64,000 nucleotides of DNA from Selaginella moellendorffii (GCF_000143415.4 NW_003314296.1:1024930-1088929); one strand, 5' to 3'. Numbered from the stretch's first letter, positions 14,391 to 56,067 are shown. The notes: a model not told the origin generated them from the sequence alone. Numbers and translations: made by a program.

Positions 14391-16375
14391 ATGTCGTTCT
14401 TTGGGACGCCGTCGACGCCCGCGGCTCCCTCCACGGCCCTCGGATCTGGCGCTGGATTGTTCACGCCGCAGACTCCAGCTTCCACCGGGTAAGATCGCTC
14501 GATCTTTCTCTCTTTTCGGGGAAGGATTTCCTAGGATTTCCGGCATTTCTTGCAGCTCGATGTTTGGAGGGGGTAGTCTTTTCGGATCGAGCCCGGCATT
14601 CGGCGGCGCGTCGAGTGGTGGACTGTTTGGAAGCTCCACACCGGCTTTTGGATCCTCAACCCCGGTGTTTGGCTCAACCCCGACCCAGACGCCGACGGCT
14701 CCAGCCTTTGGAGCTTCGACGCCGGCGTTTGGTAGCAGCACTCCAGTTTTTGGAAGCCCGGCATTTGGAGGCTCGACTCCAGTTTTTGGTAGCACGACTC
14801 CATCCACTCCAGCGTTTGGTTTGAGCAGCACACCAGCATTTGGAAGCACGTCCTTGTTCGGCATGCCAAGTATGTATTTTTCCTTCTTCTGTTTGTTCAC
14901 AGTTTGGACTCTCCAGGCTCTTCGTCACTATTTGGACAAACTCAAAGCAGTTCCCTGTTCGGCCAAGCACAGCCTTCTTCGTCCATGTTTGGAACTCCAG
15001 CTCCGCAGTTTGGCCAAACTCCTGGCTTTGGCCAGCCTCCACAGCAGCCGATGTTCCCAGGCCAATTGACGACACAGATGGCTCCTGTTGCACCTTTGGC
15101 AGTACCGCTTCCGGAGAGGGAAATCCAGGCAAGGATTAAACTCGGTTTGGCTACCTTCTTACTCTGTCTAGTGTTTGCTGGTTCTATACAGGCGATTTGT
15201 GACGCCTATAGGGAGGACCCTGCTAATTCTTGTTACGCATTCAAGGTAAGAGAAGTGTATTATGCTGTGAGACTCACCACCATTTTGTATGCAGCATCTT
15301 TTGCTTAGTGTCACGGAGCCTTCTCAGCGATTCAAACCTCCAGGCGTTTCTGATGTAAAGATGAATCATGATTTAGAGTATATGTGTAACTTTTTGCTTC
15401 TCTTTTTTCCTAGATCATGTGGGCCGAAGTGATGAGCAAGCTTGAGACGATGGGAACCGAAGATAGGGAGCGGCTATACCCAGAGCTGCTGTTGGGATTC
15501 AAAGACCTTTCGAAGCGACTTCAGGTGACGTTTCCCTTGAGTTGAAATTTCTGTTACAATCGTTTTTAGGCTGACATGTGTCGGGAGGCAGCTGCAAGAC
15601 GAGGCAATCTCTTCAGATACGAACAGGCTGCAGGCTACTGAAAGCAACGTGAAGCTGGTGAGCTTTGGATGCCACTGTGCCTTGTATCTTAGCTCTCCCG
15701 TTTTTTCGCAGCTGCAAAGACACTTCCAGGTCGTCACATTACCTTGGCTCCAACGGTTAAGACTCAAGGAGCAGCAGCTGCAACGGAAGCTGTTAAAGGT
15801 CTGTTTATTTTTTCAAGGAGCGTGGTGGTTTTCTAGCTTGTTTTCTTTTTCCAGCTTACGAGGATAATCGAAATGCTTGAAGCGAAGGGCTTACGGATGC
15901 CTTTGACAAGGTCCGAAACACTTCTGGGAGAAAAGTTACGAACTCTGGCACGACAAGTAAGTCTTTCTTTGATACGACATAGGAACTTAAGAGTGCCTTT
16001 TACCTTCTCAGCTCCAGCCAACGACAGAGCTTCCAAGGAAAGTTGACTCGGTCTTGTCGATTTCACGCCTGCGCGCAGGCGTAGGAAATGCATCGTTTCT
16101 ACCAGGCCAACTCGACGAGCAAAGCTTGACTGACATTCAAGAGGTGCAGTCTTTTGTTTCCAATGGTAGCTCTCCATTCTTATCGGGGCGTGTTTGTATT
16201 CCAGGTTCTACGCAAGCAAACTGAAGCTATATCACGTCTCGCTGGTGTGCTCAAGAGAGACATGAGAGACATCGAGATTATAACCGAGGACGAAGGTCGG
16301 TTAATGGGCATCGACTTAAGCAGAGCCAAGGCCCGAGCGGCCATGGACTTTGCTTCCTCCAATAGGTATTTTTGA
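14391..16375 (+). CDS. NUP54: Nuclear pore complex protein NUP54, multi-exon
   Basis: N-terminal FG repeats (STPAFG/STPVFG); conserved QMAPVAP..LPEREIQAI.DAY, HLLLSVTEP..KPPGVSD|IMWAE, LGFKDLSKRL; coiled-coil C-terminus VLRKQTEAISRLAGVLKRDMRDIEII. Confidence 0.9.
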
Positions 16376-16485
16376 GAGCTTGTACCGTAATTCCAGAATC
16401 CCGAGCCCGGGTTTTTTGTAGATCAATCTTATCTTTTGCTCTTTGTGTTAACTAAATGAAAATCTAACAAATGGATGACGTATAA

Positions 16486-16558
16486 GCGCTTGTAGCTCAG
16501 TGGATAGAGCGTCTGTTTCCGGAGCAGAAAGTCACAGGTTCGAACCCTGTCCAGCGCG
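16486..16558 (+). tRNA. tRNA-Arg(CCG)
   Basis: 73-nt cloverleaf: GCGCTTG/CCAGCGC acceptor (one mismatch), GCTC..GAGC D arm, TCTGT-TTCCGGA-GCAGA anticodon arm, ACAGG-TTCGAAC-CCTGT T arm. Confidence 0.88.
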
Positions 16559-16566
16559 CTCGCTCA

Positions 16567-16615
16567 TATTAACTCAGCTTGGTCAGAGCGTGGTGCTAAT
16601 AACGCCAAATGGGCC
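16567..16615 (+). pseudogene. tRNA-Ile(AAT) pseudogene, T arm deleted
   Basis: TATTAACTCAGCTTGGTCAGAGCGTGGTGCTAATAACGCCAA|ATGGGCC lacks GGTCGCAGGTTCGAAACCTGC relative to the copy at 20171. Confidence 0.85.
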
Positions 16616-16806
16616 CAAATATTTTTCTCGCAATTCAACCCTAAAGTTAACTGTTGTATGGTAAACATTAGCACCAAACGTTTTTTATTTATTAGTTACA
16701 AGAAAAATAAAATAAAATTGATCAGGTAATACTTATTAATGTATCACTATATTAAGGTAGTTAACAAGCCTTTCAAGAAAAAGGGAGAGAAATAGCTATT
16801 AATGTA

Positions 16807-17544
16807 TCACACTTTAATCTCACTATATTTCACAATTTCACAATCGCTGGTCGACTTAGCAGACCTTTCTGCGTGGAACCACTGGATCTTCCGCCCCTCG
16901 AGTTGGCGCCCTCTCCTGGCGAGCCCGTCCGCTACATTATTCTCATATACCTTGTCGTGAGCCTTGACTTTGCACAGCCGGATCTCCATCCCGCTCTTTG
17001 CAGCCGCACCAACGATGCACTGCAGGAGCGGCTTGAGCTGGATACAGTCGGGGTGCTCAGGCCGGCACTGCGCAAACTGCAACAGCTTCAGCGACTGCAA
17101 ACTGTCCGTGTAGATATTCAGCTTGTTGGACTGCCAGTAACCTCGAGCCTTGTACAGCTGCACCGCCGCAATGGAGTCGTGTATCGCAAGAAGCTCCATG
17201 TTGAGCGAAGACACGATGAGGCTGTCGACGATAGGGTTCCCGTTTTTGCACCAGCCGTTCTCCTGCGGGACTTGCACTGCCATGCCCGTCCCTTTGTGGG
17301 ACTCCTCTGCCGACGGGAAGTAGACGCCGTACCCTGCCGAGAGCGGCTCTTTATCGAAGGATCCATCAGTGAATACATTCCAAGGAGAAGATGCTTTTAT
17401 TTCATCAAGTCCTCGCTCACGAGTACAAATGGTAATGGCCCATTTCTGCCATGGCTTTCCTAATCTGACTCCTACACCACCACACACCTTCTTGTTTGCG
17501 ATGCACGCTTCATCCTCGCCAGCTTTGCGCTTGAGAGACATCAT
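16807..17544 (-). CDS. Stand-alone RNase H (type 1-like) protein, copy 1, about 245 aa
   Basis: VFTDGS, SLNMELLAI, IYTDS, KVKAHD and ENNVADGLARRG give the full D-E-D-D set plus His; N-terminal KRK...KK NLS-like motif; no RT domain; start codon inferred. Confidence 0.88.
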   Translation of the reverse strand: MMSLKRKAGEDEACIANKKVCGGVGVRLGKPWQKWAITICTRERGLDEIKASSPWNVFTDGSFDKEPLSAGYGVYFPSAEESHKGTGMAVQVPQENGWCKNGNPIVDSLIVSSLNMELLAIHDSIAAVQLYKARGYWQSNKLNIYTDSLQSLKLLQFAQCRPEHPDCIQLKPLLQCIVGAAAKSGMEIRLCKVKAHDKVYENNVADGLARRGRQLEGRKIQWFHAERSAKSTSDCEIVKYSEIKV

Positions 17545-17792
17545 CTTGTGTACCCTAAGTTTTGGGGCCCCAATTTCCAAATGTATAGGTGGCTTTGGTC
17601 GTACAAAAACGTTTCGTACTAGGTAGATGCGAACTCGCCACCCTGGAGACAGATGAAATAAAGCAAAAAAATCAAGAGGAAGTGGCCGGATGGCAGCCGT
17701 CCGATTCCTTGCACTTGTCCAGCCAAAGATGGATTGATCGATTAGCAAACTATGACAGCAACAACAATGAAAAAGTGAAAATGGCATTTTCT

Positions 17793-18185
17793 TCACTAGA
17801 TGAAAGCCTTCCACTGTAATGTCCCCTTTCGCAGCCTCTCGGGAACAGCCTGAGACCACTGTGTGAGATTGAGGAGCGGACCCGTGAAAGCCATCTTGTT
17901 AAAAAATGATCTATAGATGAGAGAGATTGCTCACCTGTTTGATCTAGCAGCAGCAATCTAGCTCCCGCTAATTCACTGGGCGAATCCCTGGGCACCTCGA
18001 GAATCGCAATGGCATTGTAGACGCTCATCATCGGGGTCACAACCGTGGGAGCAGCCGCAGTGGCCTCCAAATCCCATTGCTCCACCGAGAAATCTCTCTC
18101 CCTCTTGGACGAGGACGCGGCATCTGGGCGCTACTATCGCAATACAAGTGGATTAGACCTAACGAGAAGATATAACTCGGCATCC
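17793..18185 (-). pseudogene. Internally deleted copy of the methyltransferase gene at 21434-22865
   Basis: Last exon joined at about 17900 to intron 1/exon 1 sequence (roughly 970 bp missing); further small deletions. Confidence 0.88.
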
Positions 18186-18420
18186 AAAAAAATATGCCTC
18201 GACTCAAGTTTGATGACTACCCAAGCTTGAAGATTGTGTTAAGCCAATGGTATTTAAGCTAGAGTGGAGAGTTTTCATCACCATCACGTGTTATTACGCC
18301 AAGTTGCTTGTCTTGTTTAATCACTGATTCGTGCAAAACCGTGACACATCACACTGGGGCATCCAGGAACATGTCTCGACCAATTCCAACCAATGGATAG
18401 TCACTTAAAGTTTAAGGCCT

Positions 18421-18650
18421 CGTCTTGTTTTGCTTCAAGATGTTGGCCGGGCTGCGCGTTTGCCTCGCCTTTTTGTTTACTGAGAGTTTCGAGTGTGAGG
18501 AGCTACCTGACGAGTGCGTCTGCTTGGCATGGATCCCCATTCCAGACCTTGTCTACTGCAAGGTTGTATGCAAGCACTGGAAGTAGGATGCCACTCACTG
18601 GAGAAGCTTGCTGCAGTTGCATGAGTCGTGGTCTGTAGACAATAGTGAGG
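18421..18650 (+). pseudogene. 5' fragment of the F-box gene (copy of about 23030-23270)
   Basis: Near-identical GAGAGTTTCGAGTGTGAGGAGCTACCTGACGAGTGCGTCTGC with deletions. Confidence 0.85.
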
Positions 18651-18651
18651 A

Positions 18652-19715
18652 TCAAAGTGCACCGTGATAGCAGACAGAACAGGAAGTCCTAATGTCTATC
18701 AAACCGAAGCCACTCACCAAACCAAATCTGTTGCATAGGAGCTCAAACTGGTGTGGCCCCAATGGCTTGGTGAGAAGGTCAGCTAGCATGTCCTGTGTCC
18801 CAAGATGTTGGACTGCCAGGGTGCCACCTTCAACCAACTCATGCACATAGTGAAAATGGACTTAATGTGCTTTGAGTGAGCATGGTGGACAGGGTTCTTG
18901 GACATGGCAATGCTGCTTTGGTTGTCACACCAAGAAGTAGTGGAGCCAGCTTGTGCACATCCCAACTCAGCAAGTAACCCCTGGGCTCAGACCATGTCCC
19001 TACTACCAATAGTGAGTGTGATGTACTCCACGTCTGCACTAAAAAGTGCCACCACAAATTGTCGCCTGGAGGCCCATGCGATGGCACCTCCTAAGAAAGA
19101 AAGAAAAATGCCAGAAATCAAGCGATGGCCTTTGTTGATGGCAAAGCTAGCATCCATGTAGCATGTGAATAATGCATCACCCCCAGAATAAACAATGCTG
19201 CAGTCTATAGTGCCTTAGAGGTCAGCTTGCCAATGTATGGTGGTTGGCAATGTGTTATATTGACTCGAGGCAATAGTCACATATGTGATGTCAGGGCAAG
19301 TCATCAGGGCCAAATATGTGAAGCAACCAATGAGATGCCGATAGGGAGTCCTAGTGGGTAGAGGCTCACTGGACTACTCAATTGTGAGGTCGATAGCACC
19401 AACAATCATTGGGGTCTTGATAGGGTGGCAATCACGTATACCAAACCAATCTAACAAAACTTTGACCTTACATCATTAGCTAAGCATGTAGCCACTAGAC
19501 TTAGGATTGTGTGTGATCTCAAAGTCAAGAAAGTAAGAGTCTTGGCCAAGGTCCTTCATTTGGAATTGCTAGCTAAGAGCAGCTTTTAGAGCAGCAATGG
19601 CATTGGTGTCATCACCCATGATGAGCAAATCATCAATGTAGAGGGCCACAATAAGCATGCTCTTAACATGACCATTTACATACACATTGTGATTAGTATG
19701 GTAGCAACAAAAGCT
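18652..19715 (-). mobile_element. Ty1/Copia RT-RNase H fragment, decayed
   Basis: WCDNQSSIAMSKNPVHHAHSKHI, QDMLADLLTKPLG, ALYIDDLLI and YRHLIG..YL..T.PDI.Y motifs on the minus strand. Confidence 0.9.
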
Positions 19716-19717
19716 CT

Positions 19718-20045
19718 AAGCTTGACTGACATTTAAGAGGTGCAGCCTTTTGTTAGCTCTCCATTCTTATCGGGGCATGTTTGTATTCCAGATTCTATGC
19801 AAGCAAACTGAAGCTATATCATGTCTCGCTCGTGTGCTCAAGGAGAGACATCGAGATTATAGCTGAGGACAAAGGTCGCTTAATGGGCATTGACTTAAGC
19901 GGAGCCAAGGCCCCAGCAGCCATGGACTTTGCTTCCTCCAATAGGTATTTTTGAGAGCTACTGTAATTTCTGGATCCCGAGCCCGGGTATTTTTGTAACG
20001 ATATCTTTCGCTCTTCGTGTTAACTAAATGAAAATCTAACAAATA
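19718..20045 (+). pseudogene. Duplicated 3' end of NUP54
   Basis: Aligns to about 16122-16480 with indels. Confidence 0.9.
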
Positions 20046-20058
20046 AATGACGTGTAAA

Positions 20059-20099
20059 GCGATTGTAGCTCAGTGGATAGAGCGTCTGTTTCCGGAGCA
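20059..20099 (+). pseudogene. tRNA-Arg(CCG) 5' half, 3' half deleted
   Basis: GCGATTGTAGCTCAGTGGATAGAGCGTCTGTTTCCGGAGCA, then the similarity stops. Confidence 0.88.
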
Positions 20100-20170
20100 C
20101 GCTGTCCATCAATACTTTGTGCTCTTAAATTCTAAATCTGATTCCATTCCAATCATCATTGATTGTTTAA

Positions 20171-20244
20171 GGCCTATTAGCTCAGCTGGTCAGAGCGTGG
20201 TGCTAATAACGCCAAGGTCGCAGGTTCGAAACCTGCATGGGCCA
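20171..20244 (+). tRNA. tRNA-Ile(AAT)
   Basis: 74-nt canonical sequence GGCCTATTAGCTCAGCTGGTCAGAGCGTGGTGCTAATAACGCCAAGGTCGCAGGTTCGAAACCTGCATGGGCCA followed by a T run. Confidence 0.95.
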
Positions 20245-20479
20245 ACTATTTTTCTTGCAATTTAAAGTTAACTATTGTTTGGTAACCTTTTCACAAAAAA
20301 AGGGAAAGAAATAGTTATTAATTTATAAAACAAAAACTTTGTTATTTATTAACATTTACCTCCTCCTAACACTGCGGGCCAAATATTTTTCTCGCAATTT
20401 AAAATTAACTGTTATTTTATAAACATTGGTAGTTCACAAGCCTTTTCAAGAAGAAGGGAGAGAAATAGCTATTAATGTA

Positions 20480-21217
20480 TCACACTTTAATCTCACTATA
20501 TTTCACAATTTCACAATCGCTAGTCGACTTAGCAGACCTTTCTGCGTGGAACCACTGGATCTTCCGCCCCTCGAGCTGGCGCCCTCTCCTGGCGAGCCCG
20601 TCCGCTACATTATTCTCATATACCTTGTCGTGCGCCTTGACTTTGCACAGCCGGATCTCCATCCCGCTCTTTGATGCCGCACCAACGATGCACTGCAGGA
20701 GCGGCTTGAGCTGGATACAGTCGGGGTGCTCAGGCCGGCACTGCGCAAACTGCAACAGCTTCAGCGACTGCAAACTGTCCGTGTAGATATTCAGCTTGTT
20801 GGACTGCCAGTAACCTCGAGCCTTGTACAGCTGCACTGCCGCAATGGAGTCGTGTATCGCAAGAAGCTCCATGTTGAGCGAAGACACGATGAGGCTGTCG
20901 ACGATAGGGTTCCCGTTTTTGCACCAGCCGTTCTCCTGCGGGACTTGCACCGCCATGCCCGTCCCTTTGTGGGACTCCTCTGCCGACGGGAAGTAGACGC
21001 CGTACCCTGCCGAGAGCGACTCTTTATCGAAGGATCCATCAGTGAATACATTCCAAGGAGAAGATGCTTTTATTTCATCAAGTCCTCGCTCACGAGTACA
21101 GATGGTAATGGCCCATTTCTGCCATGGCTTTCCTAATCTGACTCCTACACCACCACACACCTTCTTGTTCGCGATGCACGCTTCATCCTCGCCAGCTTTG
21201 CGCTTGAGAGACATCAT
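20480..21217 (-). CDS. Stand-alone RNase H protein, copy 2
   Basis: Same catalytic motifs as copy 1; 10 substitutions and no indels versus copy 1 (hand alignment). Confidence 0.88.
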   Translation of the reverse strand: MMSLKRKAGEDEACIANKKVCGGVGVRLGKPWQKWAITICTRERGLDEIKASSPWNVFTDGSFDKESLSAGYGVYFPSAEESHKGTGMAVQVPQENGWCKNGNPIVDSLIVSSLNMELLAIHDSIAAVQLYKARGYWQSNKLNIYTDSLQSLKLLQFAQCRPEHPDCIQLKPLLQCIVGAASKSGMEIRLCKVKAHDKVYENNVADGLARRGRQLEGRKIQWFHAERSAKSTSDCEIVKYSEIKV

Positions 21218-21433
21218 CTTGTGTACCCTAAGTTTTGGGGCCCCAATATCCAAATGTATAGGTGGCTTTGGTCGTACAAAAACGTATCGTACTAGGTAGA
21301 TGCGAACTCGCCACCCTGGAGAAACAGATGAAGTAAAGCAAAAAAACCTTGCACTTGTCCAGCCAAAGATGGATTGATCGATTAGCAAACTATGACAGCA
21401 ACAACAATGAAAAAGTGAAAAGAGGCATTTTCT

Positions 21434-22865
21434 TCACTGGATGAAAGCCTTCCACTGTAGTGTCCCCTTTCGCAGCCTCTCGGGAACAGCCTGAGACCAC
21501 TGTGTGAGATTGGGGAGGGGACCCGTGAAAGCCATCTTGTTATTCACTTGATCAAGCTTCCGCCAGTTCACCTGCGGTTCCTTCAACTCGTAAGCGCTTT
21601 AAGTATTAGGAAATGGAGAAAGAAAAAGTCTTACCTCGCCTGGAAATGCCTTTGACATCGCATAAAGAACATGGTTCTCGCCCGTAATTGTGGACTGTAG
21701 AGTTTCATCATCGTCATGTCCACGTCTTTGCTCTTCCACGCAGTTGATCATGATCCGGCCCCCGGGTCTCAGTCTTTTCCTGAGCTTAAACCATGTCTCT
21801 GCCTGGAAGGAAGAATCAGGAAAAGATATCAGTGATCTGATGCTCCGCAAAGACTAAAACTCGTTTCTCACCTCCTTGAGAACTGGCAGAACATCGCCAT
21901 TTGAGAACAAATCCACGACAATGCCTGTAGAAAAGTGAGGTCGAAAGATTAAAAAAAAAAAAGAGAGGTTGCACCGAGCTACCTGCGAATCCACCCTCGG
22001 GATCATTTGCATCCGAGAGAGCATCGTCGATGTGAATTGTAAGCCCTCCACCGTGTTTGTTTTTGCCTTCTAACTCCGACAAGCCGAGATAATCCCTTGC
22101 CTTGTCAATTAGCTGCAAGCTTCAACGACGTAAGAGTTTGCATTGACGGTAGTTACTCACGATCTCATCAATTTCCCAGCCTATCAATTCTCGCTCTGGC
22201 CACAAGTGGAGCAGCAATCGTGCAGCAGTACCACCGCCCTGATGATCCAACACAGAAAAACCAGGAAAGCTAGGAAGAAATCGAAAAGCTCTTACCAGTC
22301 CTAGAATTGCAATGGGACCTCTGGGAATGATCGGTGGAAGCGAGGAGAACTCGTCCTTCAACCACACAAAGAGTATAAACTTGCTTTTCACTCCTCAAGA
22401 AAGGAAGCTATTTACCCAGTATGAACCGACCCACACAGAATCCTCCTTGTAAATACTATGAACATTTCCTACATTGGGACGTAAAGCTCTCTCAATCACC
22501 ACAAAAAGAACCAAATGATCTATAGATGAGAGAGATTGCTCACCTGTTTGATCCAGCAGCAGCAATCTAGCTCCCGCGAATTCACTGGGCGAATCCCTGG
22601 GCACCTCGAGAATCGCAATGGCGTTGTAGAAGCTCATCATCGAGGTCACGACGGTGGGAGCGGCCGCGGTGGCCTCCAAATCCTCCTCCGTCCATTGCTC
22701 CACCGAGAAATCTCTCTTCCTCTTGGACGAGGACGCGGCATTGGCAGCAAGACGGTCAATGCGGCATCTGGGCGCTGCGACTGGAATCGCCGGCAAGCAT
22801 CGCAATACAAGTGGATTAGACCTAACGAGAAGAAGATCGAGCACGGGCAAGTGAAGCTCGGCCAT
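21434..22865 (-). CDS. SAM-dependent methyltransferase superfamily protein (spermidine-synthase-like fold), probably plastid-targeted, multi-exon
   Basis: RLLLLDQTG|NVHSIY..WVGSYW|DEFSSLPPIIPRGPIAILGL|GGGTAARLLLHLWP..GWEIDEI|LIDKARDYLGL..GIVVDLF..LRPGGRIMINC..|VNWRKL...WKAFIQ*; GT-AG introns. Confidence 0.88.
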
Positions 22866-22923
22866 ATGCTATTACATAATTCCAACCAATAGATAAGCAT
22901 TCCATGAATCGCTTAATGTTTAA

Positions 22924-22997
22924 GGCCTATTAGCTCAGTTGGTCAGAGCGTGGTGCTAATAACGCCAAGGTCGCAGGTTCGAAACCTGCATAGGCCA
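22924..22997 (+). tRNA. tRNA-Ile(AAT)
   Basis: 74-nt canonical cloverleaf with a perfect GGCCTAT/ATAGGCC acceptor stem. Confidence 0.95.
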
Positions 22998-23049
22998 TAT
23001 CGTCCTCTCTATTTAACGAGGAAAGGGAAAAGCCTTGTTTTGCTTCGAG

Positions 23050-24231
23050 ATGTTGGCCGGGCTGCGCGTTTGCCTCACCTTTTTGTTTCCTGAGAGTTTC
23101 GAGTGTGAGGAGCTACCTGACGAGTGCGTCTGCCGGATCTTGGCATGGCTCCCCATTCCAGACCTTGTCCGCTGCAAGCTTGTATGCAAGCGCTGGAAGT
23201 CACTCATTGACGATGCCACTCGCTGGAGAAGCTTGCCGCGGTTGCATGAGTCGTGGTTTGTAGACAATAGTTCCGTTCTCTGTCGTATCTTGGCAACTAG
23301 TAATTCTCCCCACAGCGCTCGCCATCTTAAGTTGCCCTTGCTCTTGAAGAATAGAGGTCCTTGGGGTGAAGGACGCTGCAGGCTTAGGATATTTGCCGAC
23401 TCGTCCTGCGGCCTGGTGTGTGGCTATTTTGTGAATCTCCAGAGACACCACCTTCCCTATTACATGGTTGGGAATCCGATCACCGGGAAGTGGTGTTGCC
23501 TCCCCAAGCTCCCGGTGAACGAGGTCTCGAGGAAAGAGGGGAAACTGCTTGTGGATCCATGCACAGGGTACTTCAAGGTCCTGGTGTTTCTCCTTGCAGA
23601 TTTTGATCACTACTGGCTATTCAATTCGCTCAGTAGGGAGTGGCGGCACTGCCAGTTTACAAGCAAGAAGAGCATTGATGATCTCGCTGCGGATGACAAG
23701 GGACCATGGCTCGGATCCAGTATGTTTGGATTACCTAACAGGCACTCGCTAAAGGTCACTGATGGTCGGGTTGATCTTCTTTACGTGGCTGTGTTTGATC
23801 AGGTTTCAGGTTGCTATGACAGGGTCAAGGTGAAGTTTCCAAGCAATCTTTTCTGTTGTGGGCTGCCTTGTATTGTAGATTACAATGGGAAGTGGATTCT
23901 TGTTTCGTCAGCTATAAGTGGTGGTCATAAGGTGTCTGCTGCTGCATGGGAACTCGACAGGGAGACAACAGATTGGAAACTTTTGAGTGAGGTTTACATG
24001 GGTGACTTGGTGAGGAATGGCGCTCTTGAGTTTGAGTATTTTCTTGTCAAGCATTCCGTTGTTGTGCGACCAAGTATGTTATCAGTCTCTCCACCGATGG
24101 CCTTCTTCTTCAAGAATAATTCATGGAGTATCTGCAGCAAGTATAACTATAAGACGGCCTTCACGCTCACACCAGATTTATTTTCAAAGCCTAGAATTTT
24201 TTATCAGCGTCGTAGAAACATAGAACCATAG
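23050..24231 (+). CDS. F-box protein with FBA/kelch-like C-terminal region, intronless
   Basis: LPDECVCRILAWLPIPDLVRCKLVCKRWKSLI F-box motif; SSCGLVC and VGNPITGKWCCLP typical of plant F-box-associated repeats. Confidence 0.88.
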   Translation: MLAGLRVCLTFLFPESFECEELPDECVCRILAWLPIPDLVRCKLVCKRWKSLIDDATRWRSLPRLHESWFVDNSSVLCRILATSNSPHSARHLKLPLLLKNRGPWGEGRCRLRIFADSSCGLVCGYFVNLQRHHLPYYMVGNPITGKWCCLPKLPVNEVSRKEGKLLVDPCTGYFKVLVFLLADFDHYWLFNSLSREWRHCQFTSKKSIDDLAADDKGPWLGSSMFGLPNRHSLKVTDGRVDLLYVAVFDQVSGCYDRVKVKFPSNLFCCGLPCIVDYNGKWILVSSAISGGHKVSAAAWELDRETTDWKLLSEVYMGDLVRNGALEFEYFLVKHSVVVRPSMLSVSPPMAFFFKNNSWSICSKYNYKTAFTLTPDLFSKPRIFYQRRRNIEP

Positions 24232-25059: not shown

Positions 25060-25490
25060 CATTTTCTCCAGGAAGTTGATCATGATACGAGATTGTAGAT
25101 AGCCTTCACAAAGAATGTGTGGAGCTCTGGCAAAACTTCCGCTTTCGAGAACAAATCCACGACAACACCTGGACAAGAATCGTAGCTTCTGAGAAAAGAT
25201 GATAAAAGAATTTGCATCTCAAGGCACCTGCAAATCCTTCCTCCGGATCGTTAATGGCATCCGAAAAAGCGTTGAGCTCGGGGTGGAGCATTCACGATGG
25301 AGAATTGCAAGAGACTCACGATTTCATGTCATCGATCTCCAATGCTCGCTCGGCAGCAGTGATCGAGCAGCTCACTCTTGAAACAAAGAAGGTTTTCTAA
25401 GAAGAACACGAAAAGTTCTTACCAATCCGATAATTGTCTTCTGGAATGACCGGTGGAAGCGAGGAGAACTCATCCTAAAGAACAAACATG
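25060..25490 (-). pseudogene. Diverged third remnant of the methyltransferase gene
   Basis: DEFSSLPPVIP, AINDPEEGFAG and GVVVDLF-like segments in the same order as in the intact gene. Confidence 0.75.
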
Positions 25491-25817
25491 AGCTTAGACA
25501 AATTTTACCGGCAAGCATCGCACCGGAGTCTGGTTTTAGGGCTCTTGTTCTTTGGGTCTCTTCGATTCGATGTGGAATCCGAGCCGCCGAGGTGCAATCA
25601 CGCGACGCCGTGTATTTCTTGCGAAATCTCTCGTGTTTGTGCCAGGCACCGCTGGAGATTTTGTGGCGATGATCCGGCGGAGCGATCCAACCTCGACACG
25701 CCCCAATCCGTCGCTGACAACTCGAAATCCTCCCCGATCGAAGCTCCCGAGGCCGCATTTCCGCGAGAAATCCCGCACAGAGATGAGAGCTCGTACAGGG
25801 AAGAAAAATTTCTCCCG

Positions 25818-26090
25818 ATGAGGGACGAGCAAGGGTCGATGTTCTTGGTGGAGCGATTCGGGGGCGCCAGATTCCACGTCTGGAAGATGAGGATGCAAAT
25901 GCTGCTGGTGCTACACGATCCGTGGGGCGTGGTGAGCGGATCGGAGGCCCGGCCGGGAGAATCCGCGAGGAAGGAAGAACGCCTGGAGTTTGAGAAGACG
26001 GACGCGAGAGCGCGAGCGAATATGTTGCTCCATCTCGAGGACAGGCAGCTAATGCAGGTGTGGCATGGGATCTGGGATTTAGGGTTCTAG
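25818..26090 (+). CDS. Short ORF encoding only a Copia-type Gag N-terminal region (DUF4219/Retrotran_gag_2-like)
   Basis: ERFGGARFHVWKMRMQMLL..HDPWGVVSG...DARARANMLLHLEDRQL; no flanking LTR or pol. Confidence 0.65.
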   Translation: MRDEQGSMFLVERFGGARFHVWKMRMQMLLVLHDPWGVVSGSEARPGESARKEERLEFEKTDARARANMLLHLEDRQLMQVWHGIWDLGF

Positions 26091-27378: not shown

Positions 27379-29779
27379 TCAGCGTTGGTGGCTTTGGACA
27401 ACACCGAAGCCTCTCTGGACCATATCATCTAGCAGCTCGCAAGCGTCCTCATCGCGATTGGCCTTACGAAACGCATCAATGAGAAGGTTATAAGTCCCGA
27501 TGTTTGGAACACAGCCCTTCTCTATATACCCGCGAGCTCGATCAAGCATACCAGCATTGCAAAGGCCAGTAATCAAATGTGGAATACGTTATAGAGTTTG
27601 GCAAGCACCCAGGCTCCTCCAGCATCTTTCTATACACTCGACAGGCCTCGTCGACTTTCTTCTCTCTGCAAAGGACATCGATAACAGTGGTATACATCAC
27701 CACGTCCGGGTTACAACGTCTTCTTCGGGCTTCTTCGACGAGCTCCATGGCTTCGCTGGACCGGTTAACTTTACACAGTCCCCGGATCATGATATTGAAC
27801 GAGACGACGTTGGGAGGACAGTCCATCTCCTCCAGCATGAACTTTCGGGCCTCCTCCAACTGGTTTACTCTGCAGTAGCCATCGAGGATGGTGTTATACG
27901 TATAGACTGTGGGTGAGCAGCTCTTCCTCCTCATTTCACCGAGGATATGCACAGCGTCACTCAGCCGGTTCTCTCGACAGAGCCCGTCCATCAAGCTCGT
28001 GAAAGTCACCACGTTCGGGGTGAGCCCCTTGCGGGTCATCTGGTTGAGAAGATCGTACGCATCGTCTAGCCTCGCCAGCTTGCAGAAGCCGTTCATGAGA
28101 GTGGTGTAAGTCACCACGTCCGGAGAGCTTCCAGTCTCGGCCATCCTCTCCAGCAGGTTCATCGCCTCGTCCATCTTTCCCATCCGACAGAAGCCGCTGA
28201 TGAGGGAGTTATAAGTCACCGTGTTCGGCATACAGCTGCCGCTCTTGATCATCCGGCCGAAGAGATCGATCGCCTCCTTGAGCCGGCCTTCCTTACAAAG
28301 TCCATCGATCAAGCACGAGTACGTGACAACGTCGGGGCGGAAGCCTCTGGCAACCAGCTGCTCGAAGACTCGGAGAGCATCATCCGACTTCTTTGACTTG
28401 CAGAAGCCGGTGATGAGCGTGGTATACGTGAAGATATCCGGGATGCAGCCGCTGTACACCATCTCCTCCAGGAGGTCGTAGGCCTCGCTCGCCCGCTCGG
28501 CCTTGCAGAGACCGCTTATCAGGCTGTTGTAAGTCACAGCCGTGGGGACTTCTTCCGCATCTTGGACAGCAGCGCCACAGCCTCGTCGACCCGGCCACCT
28601 TTGCAGAGCCCGTCGATGAGAACCGTGTACGTGACAACGTTTCGGTTGGCCATCTCTTCCAGAAACTTTCGAGCTTCGTGGAGCCGGTTCTCGACGCATA
28701 GGGCGTGGATGACGGCAGTGTAGGTGTAAACGTCCGGGTCGAAGCCTTTGGACACCATTTTCCCCAGGAAGATCAAGTCCTGCTCCAGCCGCTTCACCTT
28801 GCAGAGTCCCTGATCAGGCTGGTGTAGGTGACGAAATCCGCCGAGCAAGAGTTCGTTGCTACCATCTTCTCGTACACGGCCACGGCAGCATCCAGCTTCT
28901 TCCCTTTGCAGTACGAGGACACCACCAGATTGTGGAGCGGGACCCGGAACTTCTTCCTCGACTCGGTGACAAGCACCTCGGCGTCCTCGATCATCTTGGC
29001 CTTGCAAAGCGGACGAACGAGGAGATAGTAGCTCGTCACGTCCTCGGCAGCCATCTCTACCATCTTCCGGAACAGCAGCTTGGCATCGTCGAACCGGGCC
29101 TCCTTGCAGAGAGCGATGATCTTGGCATTGCACTCCGCGGTGTTGGGAGCCACACCTTTGCTCTTGAGATCGACGAGCACCTCGCAGGCCATCACGACGT
29201 TGCCAAAGCCGTGCAAGATGACCGCGAAAGTTGACGCGTTTGGGAGCTGCCAGGAGTCGACCATCTCGGACAGGAGCTCTCGGGCGCGATCGTAGAGGCA
29301 AGCCCGGAGGAGAACACGCAGGAAGCAGTTGTAGGTGTAGATGGAGTGGCCGTACCCGGGCCTATGCTGCGCGTACGTGAAGAAGAACACGGCATCGTCG
29401 ACGAACTTGAGAGCCTGGATGACTTTCCGACCATCTCCGGTGTGAGATCCCCGCTCCACGCGTCTAGAGCTTCGGCCTTGGAGGGATTGGGAGCCGTGGA
29501 GCGGAGGATGTGGAGGAGGCTCTCTACTTGGAGCAAGAGGTCGGGGAACTCGTCCGCGCCGGCCATTCGCCAGAGTCGATTTGGAGGCCTGAGCTTGTGC
29601 TTGCTCGAGTCGGGAGATGGAAACTCTTCGTGCGATGATGGCGATGGTGTTGCCGAGGCGACAAGAACTGCAGTGGAAGAATGGAATGTTCTTGCTCGAG
29701 AAGGGCGATGGAGATAAGATGAGACGAGATGAGGACGCGAAGATAAAGATGGATGGAGGGGGGCAGTGATAGCAGCCAT
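27379..29779 (-). pseudogene. P-class PPR gene with at least four frameshifts
   Basis: PPR repeats (PDVVTYSCLIDGLCKEG, PNTVTYNSLISGFC) spread over ORFs 29192-29779, 28794-29459, 28534-29301, 27542-28699 and 27379-27576. Confidence 0.88.
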
Positions 29780-50699: not shown

Positions 50700-53600
50700 T
50701 ATGGCAATCATCAACCCAATAAGTACAATCGAAAGCATGATTACATATCCAATTTTCATAGGCAGTAAGACAGAAGATTCAAAATTACATGTAAAACAAT
50801 TCAACTAGATTGTCAAGATGAACAATCAAGAACAGCATCAAGCCATACTTTTCCCATACACACTTAAAAGAAAAGCTCTTGAGTGGTATAATACTCTAGA
50901 GGATTCTATACCACATGATGAGAAATTTGAACAATTCAAGGAACAGTTCCTAGCCGGAGGAACACTAGAGGAGCATTATGAGCAAATTAAGAATATAAAA
51001 CAGCGACCAAAGGAAGGAATTCAAGACTATCCTAGACAATTCAAATTACATGCAAAGAAATGTAAGGATCTCATCACTGACAAATGCAAGAGTTTGTCTT
51101 ATATACAAGGATTACGAGAAGCCTATTGCAGCATGATAGCCTTGGCTGATACACCTGATGAAGAAAGTGTTGATTCATTATCTTAAGGAATCTTAAAACT
51201 TGAGAAACAGTTTAAGCAATTCACTAAAGGTGAATCTTCTCATGTTAATGATGACTCAGATGATGAAGAGGAAGAAATACTAATCAAAACCAAAAAGAAG
51301 GGAAAAGACATTAGACATGTATTGAAGAAGTTAGCTTCAACTGAATTTAAACAAAGGAGTCTTTTGTACAAAATGTAAAAATGAAGGACATTCTGTTTCA
51401 AACTGTAAACTTCATTTACCCAAATGTCAGATTTGTGATAGAGAAGGACATTTAGCCAAGAATTGTCGATATAAAAACACCACCGAAGTTTCAAGAGTGG
51501 AAAATGTTCAACAAGGATCACCACGACAAAATTATCAAGGAAACAATAACCAAGAACAAAAACCACCAAGAAACTATTATTACCAAGATAATCAACAATA
51601 TAATCAAGGATATAATCGTGGATATAATCCCCCACAAAATCAAAACTATAGTCAAGGACAATAGAGGCAATTACAACTAACAACAATACAATGGACAACT
51701 AAACAATTATCAACGTCCACAAGGGAACAACTACAACCAAAACCAACAAAGGCAATATAACAATTACAACAATCAAGCATCGCAACAGAATTATCAACCA
51801 AGACAAAATCAACCACAAGAAAATCAAATTAGACCACAATACAATCCATAAAACCAAAGAGTCAATCAAGCTCCTGCTAGAAGACCACCAGCAGCACAAG
51901 TAGTTCAAGCAGAAGTTGATGTAAAAGATGAAGAACAATTAATAGTTGAAGAACCAGAAGTTTTGGCAATCACAAGGACACAATATGAATGTCAACAACC
52001 TGATAATTATGAAGAACAAGATAAAAGTGATCAAGCATTAGAAATCAAGAATACCGAGTGGAAAAAGAGTAAGAAAATACTTAACACCATTCAACAAGAG
52101 CTTCAAAACAAAGATTCTGAAATTATTAATGATCAAATATACCATCAAAATGACCAAACTCAAATATTAAGCTTTACTCAAGATGAGCATACAACCATTG
52201 CCGAGCACATACTACAGCAGAGAATTACTTTACCCCTACAACAAATACTGCAAATAGCACCATATATGAAAGACCAAATCTTAAAGATATGTAATCGAAG
52301 GATCCCTGAAGCTCACACACAAGAAAAACACCAATCTCAACCAACACAACAAGAACAAGTTGAAAGAATCCAATCTGGTGATTATGATGATAATGTACCA
52401 TGTATCAATGTACATATTGGCAAAAATCATATTAAAAGAGCTATCCTTGATGGAGGTTCTGGGGTTAATATCATCAAATATGCACTATGCAAAGCATTAG
52501 GATTGGGCAATATACAAATTACACCATTCAATGTACGTATGGCTGATCAAAGAGTTGTCAAACCAGCAGGCATCATCCATGATGTCTCTATGACAGTCAA
52601 AGGACATAAATTTAAAGTTAACTTTGTTGTGTTAAAAATGCTAATTGAAGAATCTTCTTACGAAATCTTGTTAGGTATAACAAAGCTGTTTCTGCACAGT
52701 ATTGGATGGAACATGAGATATGTATCCAATCCCAATAAGGACAAACTAAAATATCAATATTGACAAGTAAAAAAATCTCAAAAAGTTTCCGACCAACACA
52801 AGTTCAAGAATACAATTGGCAAGAAGGCTTAGACAATCTTGAAGAAGCTAAATTATTTGAAGTATATTTTGAACTTAAGGCAATTCAAGAAATTGACCTC
52901 AATAGGATACTTTCTATAACCAAGTGTCAAGACTATGAAGATTCAAAACAACCCAATTTAAAGAAGACACATACAACAAAAACCACCATACAAAAAGCAA
53001 GACTAGCGATACAACCAGAATAACTACAAACTACAGAATATCACCTAGATATACAAGACGAACCAACACTCACCACTGAAAATTAAGAATTCAAACTTCG
53101 CATAAATATCAATGAAGATATTGAAGAATTAAATTTAGGGGTTCCCTCAAACCCACAAAACATCTTAATAGCTATACAACTCGACAAACCTTTTAAACTT
53201 GATGCTACTGCGCTCTTTATTAAGTATAAAGATGTCTTTGCTTGGTCATATAAAGACCTCAAAGGTATACCACCTGATTTATGTACACATCAAATCAAAT
53301 TACTTCCAGAAATTCGACCCATTAAACAAACTGCTTACCGGATGAATCCAACATTCATTGAGAAAGTAAAAGCTGAAATCAACAAGCTCCTTGAAGCAGA
53401 ATTCATATATCCAATACAAAATGCCCAATGGCTATCACCTTTACTCATTGTACCCAAAAAATGGGAAATTATGCATTTGTGTGAACTACAAGAAGTTAAA
53501 TGATGCCACTACGAAGGATGCCTTTCCCATCCCATTTTCAGATCAAATACTTGATGCCATTGCCGGTTATGAGATGTACTCATTTCTTGATGGTTCTTTA

Positions 53601-56067
53601 GGCTACAATCAAGTACATATAGCTGTCGAGGATCAACATAAAACAGCTTTTATAAGTCCATGGGGAGCATACGCATACATGCGAATGCCATTTGGATTAA
53701 CTAATGCCCCATTTACATTTCAACGGATCATTACCAATACTTTTCAAGATTATCTCATAGATTTCATGTGAGTTTTTATAGATGACTTTAATGTCTTTGG
53801 ACCTAAAGACAAAAACCTTGAATACCTCGAGAAATGCTTTATCAAATGCAGACAAAACTAAGTTGCTCTGAATTCTGAAAAATGTACTTTTTTTGTTAAA
53901 TCAGGCATACTATTTGGCCACATTGTTTCCACTCAAGGCATTTAAATTGATAAAGCTAAAACCGATGTCATTATGAAAATGCAACCACCTCATGATCTCA
54001 AAAGCTTGCGTAGTTTTCTGGGCAAGATGGGTTACCATAGAAGATTTATCAAGGACTATGCCAAAGTCGCTACACCATTAACTGAATTACTTAAGAAAGA
54101 CAAATTTTATCATTGGACTCAAGACTGTCAGCAAGCATTCTTGGTACTCAAAGAAAAAACTTACACAGGCACCAATTCTGGTCCAACCAAATTGGATGTA
54201 AGCAACCAAAGAGAACGACTCGAGAAACGATTTATGGGGTTAAGGGTCTTGGGATATTTGGGGTTAAGTATCCTTGGGTTTGAATAGTACTGGGCTGGGT
54301 GACCTCCCGATAAGTCCAAACTCAGGATCTTACACTGGACTCAAGAATTTCTTGTACAAGTTGATGCCTCTAACTATGTGTTAGGAGCAATTCTTTACCA
54401 AAGAAAAGATGATCATCATGATCACCCCATCTATTATACAAGTCAACAACTTTCTCCACCTGAAATGAATTATACAACTGCAGAAAAAGAAGCCTTAGGC
54501 ATGATATATGCCTTGACCAAATTCCGACATTATTTACTTTCCAACAAAGTCAAAATATTCGTTGATCATCAAGCATTGATTCATCTACTCAACAAACCCA
54601 TTATAAGTGGCTGAATAGCAAAATGGTTCTTGTTATTACAAGAATTCAATTTTGAAATAGTTCACAAACTTGGCAAATACCACGAACAAGCTGATCATCT
54701 CAGCAAAATTACAACTGGAGAAAATATACAAAACCCCAACGATGTCTTACTTGATTCACATCTTTTTAAGATTACCACCCACGATATATTACAAGAAATC
54801 TTTCATTATTTAACTACTACAAAAGTTTCGACATCATATACCACGCAAGATCAAAGGAAAAAAATTCGTCTTGAGGACATGACGATACTTAATCGTCGGA
54901 GGAAGACTCTATAGAATTGGACATGATAATATATTAAGAAGATGTGTACGTTCACAAGAAGAAATACACGAGTTACTAGAAGAGGCCCATACTAATTGCT
55001 CTGAAGAGCATTTTGCAGAAGAAATTACAGCAAGGAAAATATTGCAAGTAGGCCTATGGTGGCCTACATTATGGAAAGACACTTCACAGTTTTGTCAAAC
55101 TTGTGATATTTGTCAACGTACACAATTTCCACCCAAGAAACAAACACAAGAACTGAATCCGACTATGGCAATGGAACCTTTCCAAAGATGGGGCCTAGAT
55201 TTTGTAGGACCCATACAAAAGAGCAGAAATGGAAATCAATATATTTTGGTGGCAACAGATGATATGACAAAATGGGCAGAAGCCCAACCACTCAAGAAAG
55301 TGACAGTAAAGAATACAGCAAAGTTTCTTTATAAAATGATTATCACAAGATATGGATTACCTCAAGAAATAGTAACGGATAGAGGAACACATTTCCTCAA
55401 TGAAACAATCCAGATTTTACTAGACGAATTCTTCATCAAACATAAGAAATCTACACCATATTATCCACAAGGCAATGGCCAAGCTGAATCCACAAACAAA
55501 ACACTCAAGAATATATTGAAGAAAATAGTGCAAACCAATCTTAAAGATTGGGATAATAGAGTTTATGATGCTCTTTGGGCTTATAGAACAGCATATAAAG
55601 TTTCAACAAATTCAACTCCATTCAAATTAGCTTATGGACTTGAAGCTTTGACACCATTAGAATATACTATACCATCCTTGAGAATGGCAATTCAGTTGCG
55701 AATTAATCAAGAAGAATCAATCAAGAAAAGATTGACTATGCTAGAAAAGTTAGATGAAGAAAGATTATATGCTTTATGGACAATTGAAGCCATACAAGCA
55801 AAGAGAAAAGCTTATCACGATAGAAAACAGACTAAAAAGAAAACTGATAGATTTGAAGTTGGAAATTTTGTTCCATGGTATAGAGGAAATGTTGATAAAA
55901 TCGGAGGCAAATTGGTACATCAATGGGAAGGACCATTCAAGATCACAAGTATGCAAACACCCGGCACAGCTCACTTAGCGACACTTGATGATGAAGAAAT
56001 TCAAATAGTCAATCTCAACAAATTGAGAAAATATCAAGAACCAAGTATAGCATATATACAAGCCTAA
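50700..56067 (+). mobile_element. Decayed Ty3/gypsy gag-pol (no chromodomain seen)
   Basis: Two zinc knuckles CTKCKNEGHSVSNC and CQICDREGHLAKNC; protease ILDGGSGVNII; RT (RMPFGLTNAP, FIDDF); RNase H (VDAS, EKEALG, FVDHQAL); integrase (WGLDFVGP, TDRGTHF, GNGQAES, GPF); in-frame stops. Confidence 0.93.
54197..54334. mobile_element. 138-bp mini solo LTR inserted in pol
   Basis: TGTAAG...CTTACA termini, TSD TTGGA/CTGGA; removal restores ILVQPNWTQEFLVQVDAS. Confidence 0.88.

What the first reader, a model, noticed from the sequence alone, without database searches (positions are those of the whole stretch)
16807..21217. Duplicated RT-less RNase H gene, apparently under purifying selection while its neighbours decay
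Seen: two intronless 738-bp ORFs with all type-1 RNase H catalytic residues (TDGS, E, TDS, AH, AD) and a bipartite-NLS-like N-terminus. No RT, hybrid-binding domain, LTR or poly(A) tail is recognisable. A hand alignment gives 10 substitutions: 8 synonymous, 2 non-synonymous (P/S, A/S) and no indels. In the same duplicated block the methyltransferase, F-box, NUP54 tail and tRNAs all carry deletions. Inference: this is a functional, possibly retroelement-derived (domesticated) nuclear RNase H family kept in both copies. Each copy points toward a tRNA pair about 200-250 bp away, and Pol III genes are known R-loop sites. It could resolve R-loops or restrict retrotransposons in this TE-rich region.
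Basis: partly seen in the sequence, partly recalled or inferred. Interest (0 to 1): 0.78.

Follow-up and report, generated by a model that had tools for sequence, protein, structure and literature searches.

The report
Duplicated stand-alone RNase H gene, spikemoss
The spikemoss Selaginella moellendorffii carries two unannotated tandem copies of a small RNase H gene with no reverse transcriptase attached; selection has kept both intact while the genes copied with them decayed, but their link to the nearby tRNA genes is an accident of the duplication.

Summary
Two 245-codon ORFs (16807-17544 and 20480-21217, minus strand) both match Pfam RNase_H above threshold. They differ by 10 substitutions, 8 synonymous and 2 not, with no indels.

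The window is Selaginella moellendorffii scaffold GL377600.1. Neither ORF is annotated or present in the protein collection.

Formal tests support purifying selection since the duplication:
- dN/dS is 0.07 (P 2e-4 to 5e-3 under different mutation models).
- Synonymous divergence (5%) equals the divergence of the co-duplicated non-coding DNA (about 5%).
- No indels occur where 8-10 are expected (P about 5e-5).

Only three relatives exist among 1.84 billion representative proteins. All are S. moellendorffii proteins at other gene-rich loci, with no reverse transcriptase beside them. All keep the D-E-D-H-D active site at 31-39% identity.

The domain is a His-type RNase H1 fold (Z 15 to human RNase H1). 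It lacks the hybrid-binding domain and the basic protrusion.

The nearest outside relatives are RNase H domains of a multi-copy element on eukaryote-like metagenome contigs. I read that element as a decayed LINE, but no tool confirmed this.

The tRNA/R-loop idea is not supported: the tRNA neighbours were copied once with the block, and the three paralog loci examined have none adjacent.

Expression and activity remain untested. The scan had already noted a six-copy array of such genes elsewhere in this genome (s1-420293).

The parts
16807..17544 (-). RNase H gene copy A: 245 codons plus stop, intronless. RNase H core at about residues 56-214, family-specific N-terminal strand and helix at 37-51, low-confidence N-terminal 35 residues.
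   Evidence: ORF and translation; PF00075 at 39.4 bits; AF2 model; Z 15.2 to human RNase H1 catalytic domain
20480..21217 (-). RNase H gene copy B: 245 codons plus stop. Ten substitutions from copy A (8 synonymous; P67S, A182S).
   Evidence: no gene model here in the public annotation of GL377600.1
17545..17901 (-). 5' flank of copy A, homologous to 21218-21542: 2.5-3.4% substitutions and 3-4 indels. It includes a 75-nt block (17707-17781 = 21347-21421) identical in both copies. Probably promoter or 5' UTR, and the 3' end of the upstream gene.
16486..16608 (+). tRNA pair downstream of copy A: intact tRNA-Arg(CCG) 16486-16559 and a truncated tRNA-Ile 16567-16608
20060..20244 (+). tRNA pair downstream of copy B: truncated tRNA-Arg at about 20060-20099 and intact tRNA-Ile(AAT) 20171-20244
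16122..18646 (.). Duplication unit 1: nucleoporin gene tail, tRNA pair, RNase H A, remnant of the upstream minus-strand gene (17750-18123), 5' fragment of the F-box gene (18424-18646)
   Evidence: self-BLAST and repeat families; block divergences
19718..23271 (.). Duplication unit 2: nucleoporin-tail fragment, tRNA pair, RNase H B, complete upstream gene (public model at 21434-22640, minus strand), third tRNA-Ile 22924-22997, start of the intact F-box gene (23050-24231)

Best explanation
These are two tandem paralogs of a Selaginella-restricted family of stand-alone type-1 RNase H genes.

Shown:
- A ~3.6-kb host segment (nucleoporin tail, tRNA-Arg/tRNA-Ile pair, RNase H, an upstream gene, start of an F-box gene) was duplicated in tandem.
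- Since then the redundant neighbours lost large pieces, and each tRNA pair lost one member.
- Both RNase H reading frames accumulated almost only synonymous changes and no indels.
- The protein has the full D-E-D-H-D active site and a predicted RNase H1 fold.
- It lacks the hybrid-binding domain and the basic protrusion.
- It has a family-specific N-terminal strand and helix.

Inferred:
- The protein is an active, metal-dependent endonuclease that cuts the RNA strand of RNA:DNA hybrids.
- It probably acts in the nucleus.
- It probably needs its own extensions or a partner for substrate binding.
- The family probably descends from the RNase H domain of a non-LTR retroelement that lost its RT.
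- It now serves a host function, such as removing hybrids or opposing reverse-transcribing elements.

The position next to tRNA genes is incidental.
For: Identity of the sequence:
- The window is identical to S. moellendorffii GL377600.1 over 21,158 bases.

The protein is a type-1 RNase H:
- PF00075 above threshold in both copies.
- A family profile hits human RNase H1 (E 3e-6) and E. coli RNase HI in the PDB.
- The AF2 model has pLDDT 75 and pTM 0.78.
- It aligns to the human RNase H1 catalytic domain at Z 15.2, rmsd 2.2 A, 138 residues.

Selection since the duplication:
- NG86 gives dN 0.0035, dS 0.051, ratio 0.069.
- P(8 or more synonymous of 10) is 1.6e-4 to 5e-3 over kappa 1-8 and CpG bias 1-10.
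- Non-synonymous-site divergence is below the near flanks (Fisher P 2e-4); synonymous-site divergence is not (P 0.47).
- Co-duplicated non-ORF blocks diverge 2.5-9.1%.
- No indels in 738 bp where about 10 are expected from the near flanks (P 5e-5).
- Both replacements fall in columns that vary across the family.

The family:
- Only 3 relatives at E<=1e-3 among 1.84e9 representatives of any length, all S. moellendorffii.
- Their loci are gene-rich, with no RT called or found by tblastn.
- Five catalytic residues are invariant at 31-39% identity.
- The family is monophyletic at 95/89 support.
- In alleles P0001/P0004, the RNase H domain has 1 synonymous difference in 603 nt, against 8 substitutions and 2 indels in the 507-nt N-terminal part.

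Retroelement affinity:
- The family is sister, at 100/98 support, to P0006-P0009/P0011.
- That group shares the absence of the basic-protrusion block.
- It is multi-copy, with RNase H embedded in longer reading frames.
Against: - No expression evidence. Neither protein, nor the forms starting at the second Met or at the upstream in-frame ATG, is in the 15-billion-protein collection, which includes assemblies of sequencing runs. The public annotation has no model here.
- The selection test rests on only 10 substitutions and cannot say that both copies are constrained today.
- The allelic pair P0003/P0005 shows 5 synonymous against 6 non-synonymous codons, which is weak constraint.
- RNase H domains without a basic protrusion or hybrid-binding domain can be inactive alone. 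The isolated HIV-1 domain is an example (established knowledge).
- In the window copies the usual G-N-E before the last Asp reads E-N-N.
- The LINE nature of the sister group was not confirmed by any tool.
Confidence: 0.68

Rival explanations
1. The ORFs are neutral relics of a retroelement's RNase H domain that happened to lie in a recently duplicated segment. Their intactness and similarity are chance.
For: Unannotated and no record of the protein anywhere. TE-rich surroundings, with copia gag at 25488-26090 and gypsy protease and integrase at 51963-56067. The RNase H type resembles retroelement domains.
Against: An 8:2 synonymous to non-synonymous split has P 2e-4 to 5e-3 under neutrality. 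There are no indels against about 10 expected. Non-synonymous sites are about 10-15 times less diverged than the co-duplicated non-coding DNA. The substitutions arose in place after a segmental duplication, so selection during transposition cannot explain them.
Confidence: 0.08
2. Gene conversion between the two copies keeps the ORFs alike, without selection on the protein.
For: Divergence varies along the block: 9.1% in the nucleoporin tail against 2.5-3.9% next to the ORF. A 75-nt stretch is identical in both copies.
Against: Conversion lowers divergence but does not favour synonymous changes. Synonymous divergence in the ORF (5.1%) is as high as the mean of the non-coding blocks (about 5%). 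Indels are present right up to both ORF borders and absent inside.
Confidence: 0.05
3. One reading: the enzyme is placed beside tRNA genes to resolve Pol III R-loops there.
For: Both copies end 200-250 bp from a tRNA pair and point toward it.
Against: Both arrangements come from one duplication, so this is a single observation. The paralog loci have no tRNA within 10 kb (L001, L002) or one 3 kb away (L003). A diffusible enzyme gains nothing from where its gene lies. One tRNA of each pair has itself decayed.
Confidence: 0.03
4. The family is a host RNase H of cellular or bacterial descent that lost its hybrid-binding domain and basic protrusion, with no retroelement ancestor.
For: The best PDB sequence and fold matches are human RNase H1 and bacterial RNase HI. 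No RT is linked to any family member. No long RT-bearing protein was found with the P0002 domain or by the full-library search.
Against: The family is sister, at 100/98 support, to a multi-copy element-like group, not to the proteins that carry the hybrid-binding domain. Structural alignments to retroviral RNase H start at model residue 30-35 and cover the extra N-terminal strand, while those to cellular enzymes start at 49-54. No ortholog outside Selaginella is detectable.
Confidence: 0.15

Closest known systems
Eukaryotic RNase H1 (human RNASEH1; Arabidopsis AtRNH1A/B/C)
   Same: Same fold and the same D-E-D-H-D active site. Best PDB matches by profile (E 3e-6) and by structure (Z 15.2, rmsd 2.2 A). 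His, not Arg, at the position that separates this subtype from the archaeal-like one (criterion from PMC4408406).
   Different: No hybrid-binding domain (PF01693 absent). No basic protrusion. No organelle-type presequence is evident. Not orthologous: only Selaginella paralogs are detectable by sequence.
RNase H domain of non-LTR (LINE) retrotransposon ORF2 proteins
   Same: His-type PF00075 domain of short form without a basic protrusion. The nearest outside clade is a multi-copy RNase H embedded in longer decayed reading frames on eukaryote-like contigs.
   Different: No RT, endonuclease or zinc-knuckle region in the same ORF or locus at any of the five Selaginella loci seen. Copied by segmental duplication together with host genes, not by retroposition. 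Under selection in place.
Plant archaeal-like RNase H (aRNH; Pfam RVT_3) of L1 and Tat elements and of many plant stand-alone genes
   Same: Stand-alone, short RNase H without a basic protrusion in a plant genome.
   Different: No RVT_3 match. Catalytic His instead of the Arg that defines aRNH (PMC4408406; alignment).
Annotated S. moellendorffii paralogs D8RNB2/D8RLT1 (411 aa), D8T173 (911 aa), D8RCZ1/D8RSR9 (195 aa)
   Same: Same family: 31-39% identity over the domain, the shared N-terminal motif before the first catalytic Asp, and the same missing basic protrusion.
   Different: Different loci and different N- and C-terminal extensions. These paralogs are annotated; the window copies are not.

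Membership tests
Type-1 RNase H (Pfam PF00075, RNase H-like fold) | Profile match above the curated threshold | tested here: met
   39.4 and 38.0 bits against a gathering score of 25.8
Type-1 RNase H (Pfam PF00075, RNase H-like fold) | Four catalytic carboxylates (D, E, D, D) plus the His of the His-type subgroup | tested here: met
   D60, E117, D147, H196 and D206 are invariant in the family and aligned with those of 17 other RNase H proteins
Type-1 RNase H (Pfam PF00075, RNase H-like fold) | Five-stranded mixed sheet with flanking helices | tested here: met
   AF2 model; Z 15.2, rmsd 2.2 A over 138 residues to human RNase H1 catalytic domain 8swc. This is a prediction, not a solved structure.
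Type-1 RNase H (Pfam PF00075, RNase H-like fold) | Cleaves the RNA strand of RNA:DNA hybrids | not testable with these tools
   Needs an enzyme assay
Canonical eukaryotic RNase H1 | N-terminal hybrid-binding domain (PF01693) | tested here: not met
   No hit even at E<=1; present in P0013, P0014, P0016 and P0023 from the same search
Canonical eukaryotic RNase H1 | Basic protrusion (helix C and loop) between the third catalytic Asp and the His | tested here: not met
   The block is absent in the alignment. The model has only a 4-residue helix there.
Non-LTR retrotransposon RNase H domain | Lies in one reading frame or element with a reverse transcriptase | tested here: not met
   No RT ORF or Pfam hit near either copy or at L001-L003
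Non-LTR retrotransposon RNase H domain | Groups with LINE RNase H domains in a phylogeny | tested here: inconclusive
   Sister at 100/98 to P0006-9/P0011, but the LINE identity of that group is my motif reading only. No curated LINE sequences were available.
Archaeal-like plant RNase H (RVT_3 / aRNH) | RVT_3 profile match, and Arg in place of the active-site His | tested here: not met
   No PF13456 hit; His196 is conserved; criterion from PMC4408406

The most novel reading that the evidence does not exclude
A LINE-derived RNase H domain was domesticated in the Selaginella lineage and expanded by tandem duplication into a family of nuclear stand-alone enzymes. The known members are this pair, a reported six-copy array and three further loci. 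The family might degrade the RNA:DNA intermediates of reverse-transcribing elements or viruses, as a restriction factor, using its own N- and C-terminal extensions in place of the hybrid-binding domain and basic protrusion.
Probability: 0.2. Interest if true: 0.6.

Novelty: new member of a known kind. Interest (0 to 1): 0.4.

Why it matters
Plants are known for HBD-bearing RNase H1 enzymes and for the archaeal-like RVT_3 type. A His-type RNase H without an RT or a hybrid-binding domain, confined to a lycophyte and kept by selection in several copies, would be a clean case of a retroelement enzyme domain recruited by a host. It would also give a natural test of how a minimal RNase H core binds its substrate.

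The practical gain is small but real: two protein-coding genes are missing from the reference annotation. So far, though, this is a sequence-level inference, with no evidence of expression or activity.

Tried and rejected
Protein searches
- The word-index search with the window protein gave one hit only.
- The same search with the RNase H region of the 911-aa paralog, meant to reach long RT-bearing proteins, found nothing but the query itself.
- A single-sequence PDB search found no RNase H. The family profile was needed.
- The ESM Atlas gave only generic RNase H clusters from bacteria, archaea and phages, and nothing for the L006 linker ORF.

Attempts to confirm that the sister group is a LINE (all negative)
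- Pfam on ORF pieces of L005 and L006.
- tblastn with the RT of L009.
- PDB phmmer with two RT-like pieces.
- A metagenome scan with P0007, which returned only two distant loci.

Other dead ends
- I tried to reach the other haplotype of this locus through the PPR neighbour, but its sequence is not in the cluster tables. The F-box ORF is not on record either.
- Pfam on the exon-sized pieces of the upstream 'methyltransferase' gave nothing.
- Literature searches found no description of this family.
- I considered a bipartite NLS in the window protein. Only KRK plus KK are present, so it stays a weak inference.
Full report
**What is there**

The window is Selaginella moellendorffii. A PPR protein encoded at 27545-28699 is on record on scaffold GL377600.1 of GCA_000143415.2. 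The 21,158 bases fetched around it are identical to window 17542-38699.

At the reported place there are two minus-strand ORFs, 16807-17544 and 20480-21217, each 245 codons plus a stop. Both match Pfam RNase_H (PF00075) at 39.4 and 38.0 bits, against a gathering score of 25.8. Neither hits the hybrid-binding domain, RVT_1 or RVT_3. They differ at exactly ten sites, eight synonymous and two not (P67S, A182S), without indels.

**The duplication**

Self-comparison shows a tandem segmental duplication, 16122-18646 against 19718-23271. The ancestral unit ran as follows:
- the tail of an FG-nucleoporin gene;
- tRNA-Arg(CCG);
- tRNA-Ile(AAT);
- the RNase H gene (minus strand);
- another minus-strand gene, which has a public model at 21434-22640;
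- a further tRNA-Ile;
- the start of an F-box gene (F-box domain).

Copy 1 has lost about 970 bp of the upstream gene and all but the first ~220 bp of the F-box gene. Copy 2 has only the nucleoporin tail.

The tRNA pair decayed reciprocally:
- In copy 1, tRNA-Arg is intact and tRNA-Ile is truncated.
- In copy 2, tRNA-Arg is truncated and tRNA-Ile is intact.

I could not confirm that the upstream gene is a methyltransferase.

**Selection**

| Measure | Result |
|---|---|
| Nei-Gojobori dN | 0.0035 |
| Nei-Gojobori dS | 0.051 |
| dN/dS | 0.069 |
| P(8 or more of 10 neutral changes synonymous) | 1.6e-4 with equal rates; 5e-3 with kappa 8 and tenfold CpG bias |
| Divergence of co-duplicated non-ORF blocks | 2.5-9.1%, about 5% overall |
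| Non-synonymous sites vs near flanks | P 2e-4 |
| Synonymous sites vs near flanks | P 0.47 |
| Indel events in the 411 bp next to the ORF | 5, so about 10 expected in 738 bp |
| Indels observed in the ORF | 0 (P 5e-5) |

Synonymous sites have therefore diverged as fast as the surrounding DNA. Non-synonymous sites are 10-15 times slower.

Gene conversion cannot produce a synonymous excess, and dS is not depressed. Because the flanks were copied too, the changes arose in place. Selection during transposition is therefore not an explanation. Both replacements lie in columns that vary across the family.

The test rests on ten changes. It averages over both lineages.

**The family**

A phmmer scan of 1.84 billion representative proteins of any length found three relatives at E<=1e-3. 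All are S. moellendorffii hypothetical proteins, automatically named ribonuclease H:
- P0001, 411 aa (allele P0004);
- P0002, 911 aa;
- P0003, 195 aa (allele P0005).

The window proteins themselves are not in the 15-billion-protein collection in any of four start variants. There is no gene model at copy B.

The paralog loci are gene-rich. Their neighbours are PPR, aspartyl protease, terpene synthase, DUF716, glycosyl hydrolase and pseudouridine synthase genes. No RT is called or found by tblastn. No tRNA lies within 10 kb in two of the loci, and one lies 3 kb away in the third.

Across 31-39% identity the five catalytic residues are invariant: D60, E117, D147, H196 and D206. A motif on the strand before the first Asp is also shared.

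Allelic comparisons give mixed support:
- In P0001/P0004, the RNase H domain shows one synonymous difference in 603 nt. The N-terminal 507 nt show eight substitutions and two in-frame indels.
- In P0003/P0005, there are 5 synonymous against 6 non-synonymous codons, which is weak constraint.

**What kind of RNase H**

- The family profile hits human RNase H1 (E 3e-6), E. coli RNase HI (about 1e-4) and, weakly, HIV RNase H in the PDB.
- An AlphaFold2 model has mean pLDDT 75 and pTM 0.78. It gives the canonical core: strands 56-64, 69-76, 85-92, 141-146 and 187-193, and helices 113-133, 149-160, 171-184 and 200-214.
- The model adds a confident extra strand 37-44 and helix 46-51. It has no basic-protrusion helix.
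- VIA-align gives Z 15.2 (rmsd 2.2 A, 138 residues) to the human RNase H1 catalytic domain. It gives Z 13.3-14 to HIV, foamy-virus and MLV RNase H, Halobacterium/Sulfolobus-type RNase HI and E. coli RNase HI.
- Alignments to the retroviral domains begin at model residue 30-35 and so include the extra strand. Those to cellular enzymes begin at 49-54.
- The active-site His places the family in the His-type subgroup (non-LTR, retroviral, bacterial, fungal/metazoan). It is not in the Arg-type archaeal-like subgroup common in plants (PMC4408406).

**Origin**

A profile search limited to proteins of 103-327 aa found, next after the Selaginella proteins, P0006-P0009 (E 3e-16 to 1e-12). RNase HI proteins with or without the hybrid-binding domain followed.

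In the alignment, only the Selaginella family and P0006-P0009 lack the basic-protrusion block.

A maximum-likelihood tree makes the Selaginella family monophyletic (95/89). It is sister to P0006-P0009 plus P0011 with 100/98 support. Long branches and composition bias are flagged.

The features of that sister group fit a repeated element:
- It is multi-copy; P0007 is on 26 contigs.
- It sits on eukaryote-like contigs, with a split Pex16 gene nearby.
- Its RNase H is embedded in longer reading frames that are conserved on both sides.
- Upstream in L006 I read decayed pieces that resemble the N-terminal motifs and thumb of a non-LTR reverse transcriptase. Downstream I read a piece that resembles the cysteine-motif tail.

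This last point is my reading only. Pfam, tblastn with an RT from L009, PDB phmmer and the ESM Atlas did not confirm it. A retroelement origin is therefore the more likely reading, but it is not shown.

**Function**

Shown: an intact active site, the fold, and constraint on the protein.

Inferred: hydrolysis of the RNA strand of RNA:DNA hybrids.

Cellular RNase H1 uses the hybrid-binding domain and basic protrusion to hold its substrate, and both are absent here. The isolated HIV-1 domain, which also lacks the protrusion, is nearly inactive alone, whereas archaeal RNase HI without it is active (established knowledge). Activity probably depends on the family-specific extensions or on a partner.

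A nuclear location is suggested by the lysine-rich N-termini of P0001 and P0002. The KRK...KK cluster of the window proteins supports this only weakly.

The proposed link with tRNA genes fails for two reasons. It is one ancestral arrangement counted twice, and it is absent at the other loci.

**Earlier notes of the scan**

Note s1-420293 reports six intact, unannotated tandem copies of a small LINE-like RNase H elsewhere in this genome. Its unit of about 3.8 kb (22,752 letters for six copies) is close to the spacing here.

I could not read that sequence, so I cannot say whether it is the same subfamily or a related block. My results on annotation status, selection and LINE resemblance agree with it. 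They were obtained independently on this window.

**Verdict**

This is a real, well-observed pair of unannotated genes. They belong to a Selaginella-restricted family of stand-alone RNase H proteins, and the protein has been under selection since the duplication. Retroelement ancestry is probable. The tRNA/R-loop mechanism is not supported. Expression and activity are open.

Noticed in passing
window 16486-16608 and 20060-20244: The duplicated tRNA-Arg/tRNA-Ile pair decayed reciprocally. Copy 1 keeps Arg(CCG) and has a truncated Ile. Copy 2 keeps Ile(AAT) and has a truncated Arg. One intact gene of each kind therefore survives, a small example of complementary loss after duplication.
   Followed up: partly
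window 17750-18123 versus 21419-22741: In copy 1 an internal deletion of about 970 bp joins the 5' part of the upstream minus-strand gene (promoter side) to its last ~125 bp. That gene's 5' region now lies only about 350-550 bp upstream of RNase H copy A. It could now drive copy A.
   Followed up: no
window 17707-17781 = 21347-21421: A 75-nt block about 160-240 nt upstream of each RNase H start codon is identical in the two copies, while its surroundings carry substitutions and indels. About 3 differences would be expected, so this is not significant on its own.
   Followed up: no
L005, L006, L007 (metagenome contigs carrying P0006/P0007): This is the multi-copy RNase H-bearing element that is sister to the Selaginella family. 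It sits on eukaryote-like contigs (a split Pex16 gene is nearby) and its protein composition is rich in H, P, T, N and Y. Around the RNase H are decayed, frame-shifted pieces that I read as a non-LTR RT and a C-terminal cysteine-motif region. No tool confirmed this.
   Followed up: partly
L009:1183-3660: An 825-aa metagenome ORF has an RNase_H domain (residues 193-328) upstream of an RVT_1 domain (611-786). This is the reverse of the usual RT-then-RNase H order.
   Followed up: no
L001:10001-11389 and L010:3001-4377: The public models for P0001 and P0004 (411 aa) splice out a proline-rich stretch, yet both loci read through as one open frame (462 and 458 codons). The 'intron' may be an annotation artefact. 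The two alleles also end differently at the C-terminus.
   Followed up: partly
L002:10001-12736 (P0002): The 911-aa paralog carries an internal repeat of about 80 residues (76% identical copies at residues 341-419 and about 468-545) and a long acidic C-terminal region after the RNase H domain. Neither matches any Pfam family.
   Followed up: no
window 18647-19717: About 1.07 kb between the two duplication units matches nothing else in the window. It is junction filler or an insertion of unknown origin.
   Followed up: no
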